Shown here piece after piece: positions 37,209-64,000 of a DNA stretch of 64,000 nt; positions within the stretch are counted from its first letter, which is position 1; each line of letters starts with the position of its first letter. The position numbers and the translations under genes were made by a program. The notes below the pieces were generated by a model. That model worked only from the letters and a program-made list of their open reading frames with translations, was not told the DNA's origin and ran no database searches. The stretch comes from Mytilus edulis (taxonomy: Eukaryota). The DNA lies in contig NC_092351.1 of NCBI RefSeq assembly GCF_963676685.1, positions 76,074,001 through 76,138,000 of the forward strand, read 5' to 3'.

Positions 37209-37578
37209 CTGTAATTAAAATATACAAGAATTGAATGTAAAAACAAATCTTAGACTATTCATCAAACAAGAAAACATGCAGTATTGGTAAAATTTGTACA
37301 TTTAAGTCCACAGAAATCGATAATTTTTTTATGAAAAAAGTATAAATTGATGATCTACACCTGAAATTTCATGGTCAAATGATAATGCAATCATCGATCT
37401 TGTTGCAGCATTCTTAACAGATTATAAATGTTAACTCTTCATTGAACTGATCATATTTTCATGAAAATGGTATATATAATTGACAGTCTCAACCTTCACA
37501 TGCATTTTCTCTCATTTATCCAACTTTATTCTAAATGTTCCTATTCATTAAAGATGAAATACTTCTTTAATTACTTAC

Positions 37579-37813
37579 TGCAGAAACCGATGTATCATTA
37601 TTTTGTTCTGTGAGGAACTTTGACCCCACATCTCTGATGGCATACAACGCTCTTTGTCTTAGGTAATCTGTGTTTAATTTCTGTAATTCTCGAAACAATT
37701 CTATGAGGAAGTGTGGTCGGTTTTCATTCTGTGATATCAAAGTAGCTACTTCAGCATATATACCCTCTCTCAGTGCTTCAAATAAGGATAAATCTACTCC
37801 ATCTTCTGAATCT
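37579..37813 (-). CDS. PCM1: PCM1 most conserved exon
   Basis: LFEALREGIYAEVATLISQNENRPHFLIELFRELQKLNTDYLRQRALYAIRD; phase 2/0. Confidence 0.97.
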
Positions 37814-39998: not shown

Positions 39999-41271
39999 CT
40001 AAAAATAATTAAAAATACTGTAACAAAGGATAAAACATGTGTCACACAGTTATATTTCATCAGATCATAAATGTCTCAGACTTTTATAAAACTGAGTAAT
40101 GCTATGTGTTTGTTTATTCTTCATCGGCTAGAGGTAATGGGGGAGGGCCGAGATCTCACAAAACATGTTTAACCCCGTGGCATATTTCCTCCTGTCCATG
40201 TCAGGAGCCTCTGGTAGTCTCTAATTTTAGTTCATTTATACCGTACAGCGGGTCATTTTTCACGGGGTGTAAATTTTCACATATTTTCGCGGATAGAACG
40301 AAATCACCAAAATAAATTTTGCAAATTTAAAACTGCACTTGCAAAGGAATCAAGTAAAAAGTTTTGAATCCACCAAAATAATGACCGTCCAAATATTTCA
40401 TACACTTTATTTAATGAAAATCGTGAAATTTTACACCTGCAAAAATAACTCACTATAAGATACGTTTAGGAGTTAATTATGGCATTAATTTTCACTGAAC
40501 TAATATATGTTTGTTTAGGGGGCCTGCCTCCAAGTGCAGGATTTTCTCGATGTGTTGAAGTCCCATTAGTGGCCTTCGACACATTTCCCTTTTCCGCTCT
40601 CAAATTTATAATGTCCTTTGAAAAGTGAACAGTACCTGATGACATGGTTAGCAAACCAAAATATATATGATACTCAGTACAAATGAACAAACAAATAGAC
40701 ATGATAGATGAATGGCTAGATCAGTGAACCAGAATTTTCTTTTTACTCTAATGTTAAAAAGATCTTTTTTAAATCTATAATACTGTGGATTCCTTATTAT
40801 TATTCATTGGTTTCTGACTTTTTGTGGATTTTGTGGGTACAGAAATTAAAGTTTAAACGAATAACACATTTTCTTAAGAGTTTAAGGGAAATAACTCTTA
40901 AAATCATCAGTACGTTTGTGTCAACCATTTTCAAAAATATATTCTAAGCTTCTAGGTTACATAGACTATTTTCAATCTGTTTCATGTAAATGCTTAAAAT
41001 ACATTGATGAACTTGACTTTTACAAACGCTTAACTGATTTAAAGAGTAATCTCCCTGAACCAAAGTCTGACCCCCTAATGCAGACTTCAACAAAACCACA
41101 AAATTAAATATCCACAACATCTAAGTTTTCTTTAATCCAAGAAATTAGTACCCACAAAAACAAATACATTCATGTACATGTAGTATATGTATCATTTGCA
41201 TATTGAGTTGCCAAATTCAGAAAAATTTACCGATTTCAAGATTTTTCCTACTATCAGACAACAACACTTAC

Positions 41272-41791
41272 TTTCGTCTATTTCTTTGTTCATCAAAATT
41301 TAACAATGGCATTGGTGTATCTTGGAATTCTTGACTTCTTTCTTGTACATTTTTCTGTGACTTTTCCTTTTTCTCAGAAGAATAATATTGTTCATAATTG
41401 TTCTTACTCCTACCACTAGACGCTTTCTTCCCACTACCCTGACCGTACGTTGACCGATTCACCAACAAGCCTTCATTGTTCATTTGAGGAGAGCTATCAT
41501 TACTTTGCCTATTGCCATAGTAACTACTAGGGAATTGAGGAACTTGAACACTAAAAGGTTGCTGTCGAGATTCAAGATTAGGCGACATGTTACGACTGTC
41601 TGTAGGAAGAGACTGTAAAGATCGTAGCCGCATGTCGCCACCGTAGGGGTCGGTGAAGATGTTGAGTTGCCGTTGGAGATTCTGTAATTCCATCTGTTGC
41701 ATACACATTTGTTGTAGACACTGATTCATCATCAAACTTTGCTGCTGTTGGAATTGTTGTTGTATGTCTGGATTCTGCTGGTACCCATAGC
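41272..41791 (-). CDS. PCM1: PCM1 large Gln-rich exon
   Basis: GYGYQQNPDIQQQFQQQQSLMMNQCLQQ...NFDEQRNRR; phase 1/2; its acceptor is the lowest-coordinate unit of the tandem array. Confidence 0.9.
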
Positions 41792-44114
41792 CTGAAAATG
41801 TAACAAAGAGCAGCTCATTACAAGATCAAAGTCTTGATTCTACTGGTACCCATAGCCTGAAAATGTAACAAAGAGCAGCTCATTACAAGATCAAAGTCTT
41901 GATTCTACTGGTACCCATAGCCTGAAAATGTAACAAAGAGCAGCTCATTACAAGATCAAAGTCTTGATTCTGCTGGTACCCATAGCCTGAAAAAAAAACA
42001 AGAGAGCTATACTACATGAGATACTACAAGATAGGTCTTGATTCTGCTGGTACCCATAACCTGAAAATATAACAAGAGAGCTATACTACATGAGATACTA
42101 CAAGATAGGTCTTGATTCTGCTGGTACCCATAGCCTGAAAATATAACAAAGACCAGCTCATTACAAGATCAAAGTCTTGATTCTGCTGGTACCCATAACC
42201 TGAAAAAAAACAAGAGAGCTATACTACACGAGATACTACAAGATAGGTCTTGATTCTGCTGGTACCCATAACCTGAAAAAAAACAAGAGAGCTATACTAC
42301 ACGAGATACTACAAGATAGGTCTTGATTCTGCTGGTACCCATAGCCTGAAAATATAACAAGAGAGCTATACTACATGAGATACTACAAGATAGGTCTTGA
42401 TTCTGCTTGTACCCATAGCCTGAAAAAAAAAACAAGAGAGCTATACAACATGAGATACTACAAGATAGGTCTTGATTCTGCTTGTACCCATTGCCTGAAA
42501 AAAACCAAGAGAGCTATACTACATGAGATACTACAAGATAGGTCTTGATTCTGCTTGTACCCATAGCCTGAAAAAAACAAGAGAGCTATACTACATGAGA
42601 TACTACAAGATAGGTCTTGATTCTGCTTGTACCATAGCCTGAAAAAAAACAAGAGCTATACTACATGAGATACTACAAGATAGGTCTTGATTCTGCTTGT
42701 ACCCATAGCCTGAAAAAAAACAAGAGAGCTATACTACATGAGATACTACAAGATAGGTCTTGATTCTGCTTGTACCATAGCCTGAAAAAAAACAATAGAG
42801 CTATACTACATGAGATACTACAAGATAGGTCTTGATTCTGCTTGTACCCATAGCCTGAAAAAAAGCAAGGGGACTTACTACATGAGATACTACAAGATAG
42901 GTCTTGATTCTGCTTGTACCCATAACCTGAAAAAAAACAAGAGAGCTATACTACATGAGATACTACAAGATAGGTCTTGATTCTGCTTGTACCCATAGCC
43001 TGAAAAAAAACAAGAGAGCTATACAACATGAGATACTACAAGATAGGTCTTGATTCTGCTTGTACCCATAGCCTGAAAAAAAACAAGAGAGCTATACTAC
43101 ATGAGATACTACAAGATAGGTCTTGATTCTGCTTGTACCCATAGCCTGAAAAAAAGCAAGGGGACTTACTACATGAGATACTACAAGATAGGTCTTGATT
43201 CTGCTTGTACCCATAACCTGAAAAAAAACAAGAGAGCTATACTACATGAGATACTACAAGATAGGTCTTGATTCTGCTTGTACCCATAGCCTGAAAAAAA
43301 ACAAGAGAGCTATACTACATGAGATACTACAAGATAGGTCTTGATTCTGCTTGTACCCATAGCCTGAAAAAAAACAAGAGAGCTATACTACATGAGATAC
43401 TACAAGATAGGTCTTGATTCTGCTTGTACCCATAACCTGAAAAAAAACAAGAGAGCTATACTACATGAGATACTACAAGATAGGTCTTGATTCTGCTTGT
43501 ACCCATAGCCTGAAAAAAAAAACAAGAGAGCTATACTACATGAGATACTACAAGATAGGTCTTGATTCTGCTTGTACCCATAGCCTGAAAAAAAAACAAG
43601 AGAGTTATACTACATGAGATACTACAAGATAGGTCTTGATTCTGCTTGTACCATAGCCTGAAAAAAAACAATAGAGCTATACAACATGAGATACTACAAG
43701 ATATGTCTTGATTCTGCTGGTACCCATAGCCTGAAAAAAAAGAGAGCTATACTACATGAGATACTACAAGATAGGTCTTGATTCTGCTTGTACCCATAGC
43801 CTGAAAAAAAAGAGAGCTATACTACATGAGATACTACAAGATAGGTCTTGATTCTGCTTGTACCCATAGCCTGAAAAAAAAGAGAGCTATACTACATGAG
43901 ATACTACAAGATAGGTCTTGATTCTGCTTGTACCCATAGCCTGAAAAAAAACAAGAGAGCTATACTACATGAGATACTACAAGATATGTCTTGATTCTGC
44001 TGGTACCCATAGCCTGAAAAAAAAGAGAGCTATACTACATGAGATACTACAAGATAGGTCTTGATTCTGCTTGTACCCATAGCCTGAAAAAAACCAAGGG
44101 GACTTACTACATGA
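41771..44114. repeat. Minisatellite of 33 units (65-75 bp) made from the PCM1 intron/exon boundary
   Basis: Unit on + strand: gattctgc(t/g)tgtacccatagcctg(a)n caagagagctatactacatgagatactacaagataggtctt; 65-bp variant beside the exon. Confidence 0.95.
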
Positions 44115-44118
44115 TTGA

Positions 44119-44329
44119 CTGTGGTTTCATTATTATTTGTTGGATACCAATTTTCGTTGGTTTCACGGTTAGAGGTGAACCACGAATTCAAATGTTTAAC
44201 GAATAACATATTTTTCAATAGGCTCTGTATACAGGAATTGGCAAAACCACGAAAAACAAATATCCACGAAAATGCAAGTTTTCAGCAATCCACGAAATTT
44301 GATACCCACGAAAATGAATGAATCAACAG
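44119..44329. mobile_element. TA-type MITE, inverted relative of 28219-28426
   Basis: ctgtggtttcatt...aatgaatcaacag. Confidence 0.7.
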
Positions 44330-44589
44330 TATAGAGAATATAAAAATAAGAATGTCTGGGTTCTGCTGGTACCCATAGCCTGATAATATAACACAGAGTG
44401 CATCATTGCAGTGTCATAGGCGGAGTTCGGCTGAATATCATGAGGTCTGGTTTTCACTTGAACCAATTTTTCATGATCTCTGCTGAATCGATGTTTGTTA
44501 ATTTTTTGTGTTTTGTTGACATATACCTCTCTCTCCTCCTACAGACATTTAATGGTAAGTTATTCTATTTTAATAGTTCAGTAACTTAC

Positions 44590-44728
44590 CTGCAGGAGAC
44601 TGTTGCATTATGGGACCAGGTGTGTCTCTCTGTAACAGAGACTGACATAAGTTTGTTAGTCTGTCAATCTGTTGTTGTAGGGATGCTGGCTCATCATCCT
44701 GAATAATATCCTCTGCTGATCGGAAATT
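44590..44728 (-). CDS. PCM1: PCM1 exon
   Basis: NFRSAEDII...LQQQIDRLTNLCQSLLQ...SPA; phase 0/1. Confidence 0.9.
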
Positions 44729-45151
44729 CTGAAATCAAATGGGAACATCATTTCTTTTTATATCAAAATCATAAATCAAACAAGTTGTTATAAAATTTTA
44801 GTTTGAATTTGAGAATTGAGTTGGTTTTTTTTTTTTACTTTTTTTTTTTGTGTTCCTGCCCTTTGGTTTTTACAAGCATGTTCAGTACTCTCATTTTGTG
44901 TTTTGAGAACTATTAACACCAACCTTTCTTTTCCATTATTCTGGGTAACTTTGTGTACTTGAACTACATGTTATGGGCATATAGGCTCTTATGAAAAAAA
45001 ACACTTCATCATGTCTATTTTCTGTCATTTCAATTAGAATTCTGTCAACTGCATTTTACAAAATTGATAAAAAAAATCCCTTTATAGACTAAAATCTGTT
45101 AAAGTCAATTCCTAAAAAAACTTAATTCAACATCGATCTCACCCTACAAAC

Positions 45152-45216
45152 CTCTTGTCTTTGTCTGCTTTTCTTTTGTTTCTTTGAAAAATTTCTTTGC
45201 TTTGGACGAGCCCCAC
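45152..45216 (-). CDS. PCM1: PCM1 exon
   Basis: GARPKQRNFSKKQKKSRQRQE; phase 1/0. Confidence 0.82.
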
Positions 45217-45384
45217 CTGAAATATTGAAAATAAATTTTGATTGAAATTACAAAAAACTCAATTTTCTTGAAAACAAGCAGTCTTGTTGGTTCTGAGCAA
45301 AAACAAACAAGCAGGATTGCAGTGTTGATCCTGTTTTACTCATGTTTGCTGTGGTTTAATTTTTCTCTGGAAATTAGTTATTAA

Positions 45385-45653
45385 GGTAGTACATAACACT
45401 ACAGGGAGATAACTCTGTAAAACCAGCTGAACGTTTTAACCAAATTCTATTGTTAAGAAAATATTAAGCTTCTCAATAATCAAAATGAGAGTTTGTCAAA
45501 CTGCTATAAATCCAACCATTTTTTTCAAATGTGTCTGGTTCAAGTTTTTTTAAATTTTGATATTTTTGTCAAAGGGTCAAAGTCAATATTTTTCAAAATT
45601 TTATGAAAATTAAACGAGCCGAATTAATTTTAGTCAAGGTGTTAGGTACCAAC
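45385..45653. mobile_element. Diverged GGTGGTACC TTAA MITE
   Basis: Similar to 29664-29936. Confidence 0.72.
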
Positions 45654-46361: not shown

Positions 46362-46630
46362 GGTGGTACCTAACACTACAGGGAGATAACTGTAAAATCA
46401 GCTAAACGTTTTAATTACGTTGTGTTGTTAAGGGAATATTAAGCTTCTCAATGATCAAAATAAGTGTTTGTCAAACTGCTATATAACCAGTGTAATTTTT
46501 CTGATAAAACGGTTGGTTCAAATTTTTTTTAATTTTTATATTTGTAAAAGGGTTAAAGTAAATACTTTGTCAAAATTTTAAGAAAATTAAACGAGCCAAA
46601 TTAATTTTAGTTAAAGTGTTGGGTACCACC
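46362..46630. mobile_element. GGTGGTACC TTAA MITE
   Basis: Near-identical to 29664-29936. Confidence 0.82.
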
Positions 46631-54138: not shown

Positions 54139-54474
54139 GGTGGTACCAAAAACCTTCGCATAAATTAATTTGGCTCGTTTAATTTTCACAAAATTTTGAC
54201 AAAATGTTCACTTTGACTATATGACAAAAATATATAAGAATTTCAAAAAACTTTATCCGTTATCGGTAAATTTTCGTTGGACAAATAGCAGTTTGACCAA
54301 CACCAATTTTGAGAAGCTTAATATTTCCAAAACAATAGAATGTTATTAAGAGGTTCAGTTGATTTTTACAGAGTTATCTCCCTGTAGTGTTATCTACCAC
54401 CTGACAGAGTTATCTCCCTGTAGTGTTATCTACCACCTCACAGAGTTATCTCCCTGTAGTGTTATCTACCACCT
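54139..54474. mobile_element. GGTGGTACC MITE with triplicated 36-bp end
   Basis: acagagttatctccctgtagtgttatctaccacct occurs three times. Confidence 0.72.
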
Positions 54475-54713
54475 GAATTCAATCTTTAATCTGTTGTTTC
54501 TACCTCACTGACACCCATCAAATTTCATAAAATGCTTCTTGCGGAATCCTGACCACACATTTTGAATAATGGAACAGCCCTAAGTGTTAACTGTTACCAT
54601 TTACATTGTCTATATTGATATTGAACACTGGTTATACTGTATGCCCTCTTTTTTGTTGATTGCTTAAAATATATGTAAACCAAAACCGCTAAAAATTAAT
54701 ACATTATTCATAC

Positions 54714-63409: not shown

Positions 63410-64000
63410 CTGAAAAAAAGTAGAAAAGATCATAAATTGTATAGGTAGTGCTAGTAGATATAGGCAATATAATTATAAACCATTAGACTATTAACTTGAA
63501 TCCTCAAATACAAATTAGATACATACAATCATTGGTGTGTGTGTGTTGAGTTGCTGTCTCATTGACATATACAGGTACCTACTGTAGAAACACTAAATTT
63601 CGTGGTTTTGTCTCCTACTCTCTACCAAAAATTTCATGGGGATTTAATTTTGTAGTTTCGAAAAAATGGAAGTGATATTATATAAAAGTTATATTTTATA
63701 ATATAAAATTGATATTATATAATATAAAAGTGATATTATATAAAAGTTAGATTTTCGTGGGGGTTTATTTTCTTTCCACGAAAAAAACGAAATTGAATCC
63801 TCCACAAAAAAAAGAAATAGAATCCTGCACGAAAAAAACGATATTGAATCCTCCATGAAAAAAATTCTGCTTTTAGTCTACTCTGTTGCATTTATTCTTT
63901 CATTTATACTAGTGAGGTTTAAAATGTTGCCTGTTCCTTTGCTATTTGTGTATATTAATTAACTTCATGTACTGATTTTGTGTCATGGATGGATAGGATA

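What the first reader, a model, noticed from the sequence alone, without database searches (positions are those of the whole stretch)
41771..44381. A PCM1 3' splice site amplified about 33-fold: minisatellite of decoy acceptors ahead of the real exon
Seen: on the sense (-) strand almost every 65-75 bp unit reads pyrimidine tract-CAG|G(C/T)TATGGGTAC(C/A)AGCAGAATC, which is the acceptor plus the first ~21 nt (GYGYQQN) of exon 41272-41791. I count 33 units including the real one. An orphan copy (AG at 44380-44381, reading GYGYQQNPDI) lies only 210 nt from the upstream donor at 44589. The functional acceptor is the most distal, and most decoys have a longer U-tract (up to T10-CAG) than the real site (gttacattttcag). 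The orphan and the three nearest decoys give frameshifts or stops. Inference: exon definition or branch-point differences must silence over 30 competing sites, or the array acts as a copy-number-dependent modulator of productive splicing versus NMD.
Basis: partly seen in the sequence, partly recalled or inferred. Interest (0 to 1): 0.85.

Follow-up and report, generated by a model that had tools for sequence, protein, structure and literature searches.

The report
Splice-acceptor minisatellite in mussel PCM1 intron
An intron of a mussel PCM1-like gene ends in about 33 tandem copies of its own 3' splice site plus the first 27 bases of the next exon; the available RNA uses only the last, genuine copy, so this is a large example of the known 'mirage' kind of repeat.

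Summary
On the minus strand, 41792-44114 is a tandem array of 65-75 bp units. Each unit is a polypyrimidine tract, CAG, and the first ~27 nt of exon 41791-41272. There are 32 decoy acceptors, the real one, and an older orphan copy at 44380.

The gene is PCM1-like. A public 1800-aa protein maps exon by exon onto the window and joins 44590 to 41791. A 4.1-kb PacBio transcript contig shows the same junction.

Two raw RNA-seq runs and the PacBio run give essentially no depth over the array (0 to 0.22), against 9-22 in the exon. All 33 other acceptors would meet a stop within 5-84 codons. By a matrix built from 27 other acceptors of this gene, 22 of 32 decoys score above the real site.

This is a 'mirage' minisatellite, a tandem repeat spanning an exon-intron boundary. 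The kind is known from amphioxus Adh3 and globin genes and mirrored by the human F7 intron-7 VNTR of silent donor sites. The scan found the same kind before on other DNA of this genome (three follow-ups).

A copy-number-dependent splicing/NMD rheostat has no support, but it is not excluded. The RNA runs carry another organism label, NMD could hide products, and array length in other individuals could not be measured.

The parts
44590..44728 (-). Upstream exon C of the PCM1-like gene. It ends ...CCTGCAG, with donor GT at 44589-44588 (CAG|GTAAGT), and leaves a phase-1 intron.
   Evidence: Junction mapping of public protein P0004. RNA depth and PacBio contig record 9.
44352..44419 (-). Orphan unit: a diverged older copy of the junction segment. 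It has about 40 nt of intron-like sequence, AG at 44381-44380, and 28 nt of exon-like sequence reading GYGYQQNPD.
   Evidence: aligns to the 65-bp class-A unit. It keeps AAC CCA where all array decoys have AAT CAA.
44118..44331 (.). Dispersed repeat (transposable-element-like, TTTCGTGG motifs) lying between the orphan and the array.
   Evidence: In the DNA run, word depth is about 3x10^5 against about 103 for single-copy sequence. Read loose ends fall at 44118 and 44314-44331, and RNA lies on both strands. A related copy sits in the next intron.
42201..44114 (-). Distal array: 27 decoy acceptor units of 70-75 bp (class B), mostly T7-T10 then CAG|GCTATGGGTACAAGCAGAATCAAGAC. Organised in a 291-bp, 4-unit higher-order repeat.
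   Evidence: Two 219-bp blocks, 42855-43073 and 43146-43364, are about 100% identical.
41792..42200 (-). Proximal array: a mix of 65-bp class-A and 73-74-bp class-B units. It holds 5 decoys (AG G at 42135, 42061, 41987, 41922, 41857) and the intronic half of the genuine unit. The two nearest decoys are identical to the real site over the 38 intronic nt and carry CAG>TAG.
41792..41793 (-). Genuine 3' splice site AG, preceded by ...gttacattttc.
   Evidence: It is the only solution for the P0004 junction. PacBio transcript contig record 9 joins 44589/90 to 41790/91.
41272..41791 (-). Exon D (520 nt, GYGYQQNPDIQQQ...). Donor GT at 41271-41270 (AAA|GTAAGT).
43170..43217 (-). Candidate 48-nt in-frame cassette inside the array: acceptor CAG|GTTATG, donor GTA|GTAAGT at 43169. 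Not used in the available RNA.
   Evidence: Donor scores 7.5 bits, about the gene median of 7.7. The frame is open. RNA depth is 0 and it is absent from P0004.
42879..42926 (-). Second candidate 48-nt in-frame cassette, with donor GTAAGT at 42878. Not used in the available RNA.

Best explanation
This is a locus-specific intronic minisatellite of the 'mirage' kind.

Origin (inferred from the sequence). A segment of about 65 bp, made of the last ~38 nt of the intron and the first ~27 nt of exon D of a PCM1-like gene, was duplicated in tandem. One upstream copy acquired CCA>CAA. That copy, and later a 73-bp derivative with an internal insertion, expanded by unequal exchange or replication slippage to 32 copies. 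A 291-bp, 4-unit higher-order repeat is still duplicating.

Why the last copy is the real site. Only the last copy is continuous with the remaining 490 nt of the exon and its strong donor, so it remains the functional acceptor.

Effect on splicing. In the available RNA the spliceosome joins 44590 to 41791 and nothing from the array reaches steady-state mRNA (shown). The silence of the decoys is most likely due to exon definition, because a decoy lacks an exon body and a nearby donor. Any leaky use would be removed by NMD, since every decoy leads to a premature stop. Both of these last steps are inferred. The array is probably neutral or slightly deleterious, not a regulator.
For: - Array anatomy.
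- Single locus in the genome.
- PCM1 identity: PCM1_C at 81.6 bits for exon 37567-37740. Public 1800-aa protein P0004 matches exon D at 100% and maps to about 33 exons of the window.
- Junction: 44589/41792 is the only solution for the P0004 junction. P0004 reads ...MQQSPA|GYGYQQNPDI. PacBio RNA contig record 9 has 45152-45218, 44589-44728 and 41271-41790 adjacent in the record.
- RNA depth over 41845-44068: 0 in X22, at most 0.22 in X23 and 0 in X19, against 9-22 in exon D. Reads are stranded as expected for a minus-strand gene.
- All 33 alternative acceptors meet a stop within 5-84 codons.
- All 32 decoys share AATCAAGAC. The real site has AATCCAGAC and the orphan AACCCAGAC, which points to one founder copy and an excluded boundary unit.
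- About 100% identical 219-bp blocks show recent higher-order duplication.
- DNA run X1: a contig with 0 differences stops at 41799, where repeated words begin. Array bins carry raised word depth, summing to roughly 2-3 kb of single-copy equivalents against 2.3 kb assembled (my arithmetic).
- Precedent: mirages do not disturb regular splicing (PMC3087553). The F7 VNTR pseudo-sites are functional but unused, and the exon-adjacent site wins (PMC1557585).
Against: - The RNA runs are labelled organism C or mollusc metagenome, whereas the best DNA holder, which is identical to the window in the flanks, is organism A. The RNA differs from the window at several exonic sites. It is not shown that the animals sampled for RNA carry the array.
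- Exon depth is only about 10-20, so decoy use below roughly 5-10% would be missed. NMD could hide more.
- The raw-read joints across this intron were not printed, because the joints table was filled by transposable-element noise.
- By motif score 22 of 32 decoys beat the real site, so their silence is asserted from RNA, not predicted.
- The exon-definition and NMD steps are inference.
- X1 may be the sample the assembly was made from, so it is not independent proof of copy number.
Confidence: 0.8

Rival explanations
1. The array is a copy-number-dependent attenuator. A fraction of transcripts splice to a decoy, acquire a premature stop and are degraded by NMD, so longer alleles give less PCM1.
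For: - Decoys have full signals and mostly outscore the real site.
- They are transcribed before the real site.
- Every decoy gives a premature stop far upstream of later junctions.
- NMD would hide the products from steady-state RNA-seq.
Against: - No array depth in two raw RNA-seq runs or one PacBio run.
- The public gene model has only the genuine junction.
- Described mirages and the F7 VNTR splice normally.
- No copy-number data exist.
Confidence: 0.1
2. The array is a nursery of new exons or of recursive splice sites. Two 48-nt in-frame cassettes (43217-43170 and 42926-42879) could be included. Alternatively, six CAG|GTTATG units could act as zero-length ratchet sites that let a decoy splice be followed by re-splicing.
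For: - GTAAGT donors at 43169 and 42878 score 7.5 bits, about the gene median.
- CAG|GTTATG scores 4.6 bits, inside the range of real donors of this gene, whose minimum is 3.0.
- The cassette frame is open.
- Ebner et al. proposed mirages as a source of new exons and introns.
Against: - RNA depth is 0 over both cassettes, and they are absent from P0004.
- GTTATG departs from the recursive-site consensus at positions +3, +5 and +6.
- The intron is only 2.8 kb.
- No lariat or intermediate data are available.
Confidence: 0.05
3. Assembly artefact: the true locus has one or a few units, and the assembler inflated the array.
For: - Tandem repeats are error-prone in assemblies. Ebner et al. noted a mis-assembled mirage in the amphioxus draft.
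- No spanning long DNA read could be inspected.
Against: - The units are not identical. There are several subfamilies, a 4-unit higher-order pattern and a proximal-distal gradient.
- X1 contigs cover array bins at 1-5 times single-copy depth and break exactly at the array edge.
- A 2.3-kb array is well within the length of the long reads presumably behind this chromosome-scale contig (my assumption; the window lies at 76 Mb on it).
Confidence: 0.05

Closest known systems
'Mirage' minisatellites of amphioxus (Adh3: Canestro et al. 2002, cited in PMC3087553; globin genes BflGb6 and BflGb9: Ebner et al. 2010, PMC3087553)
   Same: - Tandem, minisatellite-size repeats whose unit spans an intron-exon boundary. 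BflGb6 involves the 3' end of an intron plus the 5' part of the exon, as here.
- Many units keep AG/GT signals.
- Regular splicing is not disturbed.
- Evolution is concerted inside the array and the boundary unit is excluded.
   Different: - The host is a mollusc, not a cephalochordate.
- There are 33 units, against 3-6 in BflGb6.
- The unit is 65-75 bp, against 150-160 bp.
- Length polymorphism and somatic instability, shown for amphioxus, could not be tested here.
Human F7 intron 7 37-bp VNTR of 5' pseudo-splice sites (Borensztajn et al. 2006, PMC1557585)
   Same: - A minisatellite whose terminal element contains the authentic splice junction, so several near-identical sites compete.
- Only the site continuous with the exon is used.
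- The pseudo-sites are silent although intact.
   Different: - F7 repeats the donor, 5-9 times, and the first element is the real one. Here the acceptor is repeated 33 times and the last element is the real one.
- In F7 the pseudo-sites were shown by mutagenesis to be functional. Nothing of that kind has been done here.
Engineered tandem duplications of splice sites (globin constructs summarised in PMC1557585) and introns born from tandem arrays (Zhuo et al. 2007, seen only in reference lists)
   Same: Cis-competition between duplicated 3' splice sites, and tandem repeats that carry splice signals.
   Different: - This is a natural array with far more copies.
- The donor-distal acceptor is used, which does not fit a simple 5'-to-3' 'first acceptor' scan.
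- No new intron or exon has formed.

Membership tests
Mirage minisatellite (tandem repeat spanning an exon-intron boundary) | Head-to-tail array of minisatellite-size units | tested here: met
   Periods 65 and 73, together about 33 units, 88-95% matches.
Mirage minisatellite (tandem repeat spanning an exon-intron boundary) | The unit contains both intron end and exon start, and the terminal unit is the authentic junction | tested here: met
   Unit alignment. The authentic junction was fixed by P0004 mapping and an RNA contig.
Mirage minisatellite (tandem repeat spanning an exon-intron boundary) | Regular splicing is not disturbed although the units keep splice signals | tested here: met
   Only the genuine junction appears in the PacBio contig and the public protein, and array RNA depth is about 0. 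Caveat: the RNA comes from animals not shown to carry the array.
Mirage minisatellite (tandem repeat spanning an exon-intron boundary) | Concerted evolution within the array, with the boundary unit excluded | tested here: met
   All 32 decoys share CAA where the real exon has CCA. About 100% identical 219-bp blocks are present.
Mirage minisatellite (tandem repeat spanning an exon-intron boundary) | Length polymorphism or instability between haplotypes | not testable with these tools
   There is one assembly and no second copy in the genome. Read laying is capped at one call, and short-read contigs collapse the array.
F7-type VNTR of silent pseudo-splice sites | The repeat's first element spans the exon-intron (donor) boundary | tested here: not met
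   Here the last element spans the intron-exon (acceptor) boundary. It is a mirror image, not a member.
F7-type VNTR of silent pseudo-splice sites | Pseudo-sites become active when the authentic site is inactivated | not testable with these tools
   Needs minigene mutagenesis.
Recursive splice site (juxtaposed AG|GTRAGT) | A 3' splice site directly followed by a consensus 5' splice site | tested here: not met
   Six units read CAG|GTTATG (4.6 bits; the gene's real donors have median 7.7 and minimum 3.0). None reads GTRAGT at the junction.
Regulated unproductive splicing (poison exon or NMD switch) | A detectable alternative isoform carrying the premature stop | tested here: not met
   No reads over the array in X22, X23 or X19. 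The sensitivity limit is about 5-10%, without NMD inhibition.

The most novel reading that the evidence does not exclude
The 32 strong upstream acceptors are used at a low rate on array-bearing alleles and their products are removed by NMD. Array length, a fast-mutating VNTR, would then tune PCM1 output between individuals. More broadly, splice junctions in this mussel genome would be preferred seeds of minisatellites through a mechanism linked to splicing or to the pyrimidine tract. Earlier follow-ups of the scan report several such arrays elsewhere in this genome.
Probability: 0.1. Interest if true: 0.7.

Novelty: new member of a known kind. Interest (0 to 1): 0.35.

Why it matters
This is a natural cis-competition experiment at a 3' splice site. 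Thirty-two intact acceptors lie upstream of the real one and are transcribed before it. Most have longer U-tracts, and two are identical to the real site across the whole intronic signal. Yet the distal site is chosen.

That choice argues for the exon body, rather than the linear motif or first-come order, as the deciding factor. The locus could serve for acceptors as the F7 VNTR served for donors. It also adds an acceptor-side example, with RNA evidence, to the mirage repeats that this scan has found repeatedly in the same mussel genome.

For PCM1 biology it probably changes nothing.

Tried and rejected
- The search for related loci with P0003 in metagenome contigs found no relative.
- An exact 37-nt unit pattern in metagenome contigs gave 0 matches.
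- The search for homologous proteins with exon D gave only three ORF fragments at 65-67% identity. They show the conserved exon start (AYGYQQNPDI, GFGFQQNPDL) but give no DNA.
- RNA structure masking the decoys was rejected. Three distal units and the proximal units plus the exon start fold no better than shuffles (z +1.19 and +1.45).
- A dispersed satellite or a second gene copy was rejected.
- Other junction-spanning repeats in this gene: none of 100 TRF rows touches any other of the 56 mapped splice sites in the window.
- Use of the orphan acceptor. Six X22 molecules 'begin' at 44354, exactly where the orphan and the real exon sequences diverge. The RNA animals' exon start reads AAC CCC, closer to the orphan's AAC CCA than to the window's real AAT CCA. 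I read these as genuine-junction reads mislaid on the orphan, not as orphan use. This is not proven.
- The raw-read joints for 44590>41791 were not among the rows printed, and read laying could not be repeated because of its cap.
Exon D was searched alone by reference. The junction mapping assembled only the split codon at each candidate junction inside the script.
Full report
**What is there**

Tandem Repeats Finder reports an array at 41766-44114. It has a proximal part of period 65 (8.7 copies), a distal part of period 73 (26.8 copies, 95% matches) and a 291-bp higher-order period.

Read on the minus strand, each unit has four parts:
- an intron-like stretch;
- a T-run;
- CAG;
- about 27 nt that copy the start of the exon beginning at 41791.

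A pattern count finds 34 such sites:
- an isolated 'orphan', with the G of its AG at 44380;
- 32 decoys, from 44084 to 41857;
- the genuine acceptor at 41792.

Spacing between sites is 65-75 bp. T-runs are 7-10 long in 27 of 32 decoys and 4 at the genuine site.

The unit is found nowhere else in the 1.37-Gb genome: all 16 matches fall inside this array. The exon itself is single-copy.

**The gene**

- The minus-strand exon at 37567-37740 matches Pfam PCM1_C at 81.6 bits, E 7e-23.
- A search of 1.8 billion representative proteins with exon D alone returned an 1800-aa protein, P0004, 100% identical over all 173 residues.
- P0004 maps onto the window's minus strand from 63409 to 21372 in about 33 pieces.
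- For 28 introns one exact GT...AG solution reproduces the protein.
- For this intron the only solution is donor G at 44589 and acceptor G at 41792, phase 1. The protein reads ...MQQSPA|GYGYQQNPDI.
Exon D was searched by reference on its own.

**RNA**

One call of read laying laid four runs on 41150-45300:
- X22 and X23, two raw stranded RNA-seq runs;
- X19, the contigs of a PacBio transcriptome run;
- X1, the contigs of the best DNA holder.

The results were:
- A 4148-nt PacBio contig (record 9, depth 14) has 45152-45218, 44589-44728 and 41271-41790 at adjacent record positions. It therefore carries the genuine junctions.
- Depth in exon D is 9-22 in the raw runs, all in the orientation expected for a minus-strand RNA.
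- In the sixteen bins from 41845 to 44068, depth is 0 in X22, at most 0.22 in X23 and 0 in X19.
- If a decoy were used, everything from that decoy down to 41272 would be exonic, so the array would show depth. It does not.
- The same holds for the two 48-nt candidate cassettes described below.
- The joints table was filled with transposable-element noise, so the raw-read joints for this intron were not printed.
- Six X22 molecules begin at 44354, where the orphan and the real exon sequences diverge. The RNA animals' exon start (AAC CCC, from the differences at 41772 and 41769) is closer to the orphan (AAC CCA) than to the window's real exon (AAT CCA). I take these as genuine-junction reads mislaid on the orphan.

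**The main caveat**

- The RNA runs carry the label organism C, or 'mollusc metagenome'.
- The DNA run that matches the window without a single difference in the flanks is organism A.
- X22 differs from the window at four fixed sites in exon D and five in exon C. X23 shows both alleles at most of these sites.
- These could be the same species, since bivalves are highly polymorphic, or a close relative.
- It is not shown that the RNA animals carry the array.
- The share-of-words figures cannot settle this. By my count only 38% of the distinct 31-mers of the stretch lie in the array.

**DNA support for the array**

- In X1 a contig with no differences runs from 41150 and stops at 41799. That is the point where words become repeated, as expected if the repeat exists in that sample.
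- Array bins carry word depths of 15-565 against about 103 for the flanking single-copy contig.
- Summed over bins this is roughly 2-3 kb of single-copy equivalents, against 2.3 kb assembled (my arithmetic, rough).
- X1 may be the assembly's own sample, so it speaks against assembler inflation but is not independent biological replication.
- The internal variety of the array also argues against an artefact.

**Anatomy and history**

There are two unit classes.
- Class A is 65 bp. It comprises the genuine unit and the decoys at 41857, 41922 and 42135.
- Class B is 70-75 bp and makes up the rest. It is class A with an internal insertion and a T-run where class A has TTACATTTT.

The history can be read from shared changes.
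- All 32 decoys read AATCAAGAC. The genuine exon reads AATCCAGAC and the orphan AACCCAGAC.
- The array therefore grew from one already mutated upstream copy, and the genuine boundary unit has not been homogenised with it.
- Proximal units keep ACCAGC like the exon, while most distal ones have ACAAGC.
- Blocks 42855-43073 and 43146-43364 are about 100% identical, which marks a recent duplication of the 4-unit higher-order repeat.
- The orphan aligns to a class-A unit over both its intronic and its exonic part.
- The orphan is separated from the array by about 214 bp of a dispersed repeat, whose word depth is about 3x10^5.
- The first duplication is therefore older than the expansion.

**Would the decoys work?**

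- A position matrix built from the 27 other mapped acceptors of this gene (positions -20 to +3) gives the genuine site 11.3 bits.
- The decoys have a median of 12.5 bits (range 9.5-15.6), and 22 of 32 lie above the genuine site.
- The gene's own acceptors have a leave-one-out median of 8.2.
- The two nearest decoys are identical to the genuine site over the whole 38-nt intronic part. Branch point and pyrimidine tract therefore cannot explain their silence.
- They differ from the genuine site only downstream of the AG.
- Class-B units have GTAGT where class A has the branch-like GTAAT, but they offer CTCAT at a suitable distance. This is my reading of the sequence and is untested.
- RNA folding gives no sign of masking (z +1.19 and +1.45).
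- Every one of the 33 non-genuine acceptors leads to a stop within 5-84 codons, far upstream of later junctions. Any product would be an NMD substrate.
- Three GTAAGT donors lie in the array, with G at 44107, 43169 and 42878 (7.5 bits; gene median 7.7).
- Two of these donors close 48-nt open, frame-keeping candidate exons at 43217-43170 and 42926-42879. There is no RNA over them, and they are absent from P0004.
- Six units read CAG|GTTATG (4.6 bits), a weak donor directly at the acceptor.

**Most likely explanation**

This is a junction-spanning minisatellite that arose by tandem duplication and grew by unequal exchange or slippage. It has no visible effect on the mature mRNA.

The genuine site probably wins because only it is followed by an exon body and a strong donor 520 nt downstream, that is, by exon definition. 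NMD would clear any leakage. The duplication history and the normal junction are shown. The reason for the silence is inferred.

**Comparison with what is known**

- A literature search led to Ebner et al. 2010 (PMC3087553). [quoted passage not shown]
  - One of these involves the 3' end of an intron plus the 5' part of an exon.
  - They cite Canestro et al. 2002 for the name 'mirages' at Adh3.
  - They report that regular splicing is not disturbed, that haplotypes differ in copy number, and that boundary units escape homogenisation.
- The search also led to Borensztajn et al. 2006 (PMC1557585) on the human F7 intron-7 VNTR. Its first 37-bp element spans the exon-intron boundary, so that 5-9 identical donors compete and only the exon-adjacent one is used.
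- The present array meets every testable mirage criterion. Only length polymorphism could not be tested.
- It is the mirror image of F7, not a member of that case.
- After reaching this classification I found three earlier follow-ups of this scan in the same genome: s1-832272, s1-832278 and s1-832277. They also file junction repeats as mirages and say they are frequent in this mussel. I did not test that frequency.
- Within this window no other of the 56 mapped splice sites is touched by a tandem repeat.

**Verdict**

The locus is a new, unusually large, acceptor-side member of a known kind. Interest is moderate. It would make a good natural model for 3' splice-site choice, but it is probably neutral for the gene.

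Noticed in passing
window 44118-44331 (also about 40780-41175 and 63775-63864): A dispersed repeat of about 214 bp with recurring TTTCGTGG motifs. It has about 3x10^5 word depth in the DNA run against about 103 for single-copy sequence, so it is present in thousands of copies. It is transcribed on both strands. A related copy lies in the next intron, and a 26-bp tandem repeat with the reverse motif lies near 63800.
   Followed up: partly
window 41831-41856 and 41896-41921: The two decoys nearest the real exon are identical to the real site over the 38 intronic nt. Both carry CAG>TAG, which puts a stop at the fifth codon (GYGYQ*).
   Followed up: partly
window 41769, 41772 and 44612-44648: The RNA runs differ from the window at synonymous sites in the first codons of exon D (AAT CCA in the window, AAC CCC in the RNA) and at five sites in exon C. 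X23 carries both alleles. This means either high polymorphism or a closely related species behind the 'organism C' label.
   Followed up: no
window 56457-55572, 32987-27944 and the pieces at 51476-51249, 48540-48316, 38965-38696: Four junctions of the public protein P0004 could not be placed exactly. About 14 residues (235-248) have no match, which suggests a missing micro-exon. Several pieces align at only 71-89%, which points to alternative exons or differences between the public model and this assembly.
   Followed up: no
window 45410-45500 and 46370-46470; 54368-54476: A repeated intronic element shares the motif GTTATCTCCCTGTAGTGTTA. One copy is expanded into a 36-bp x 3 tandem repeat.
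   Followed up: no
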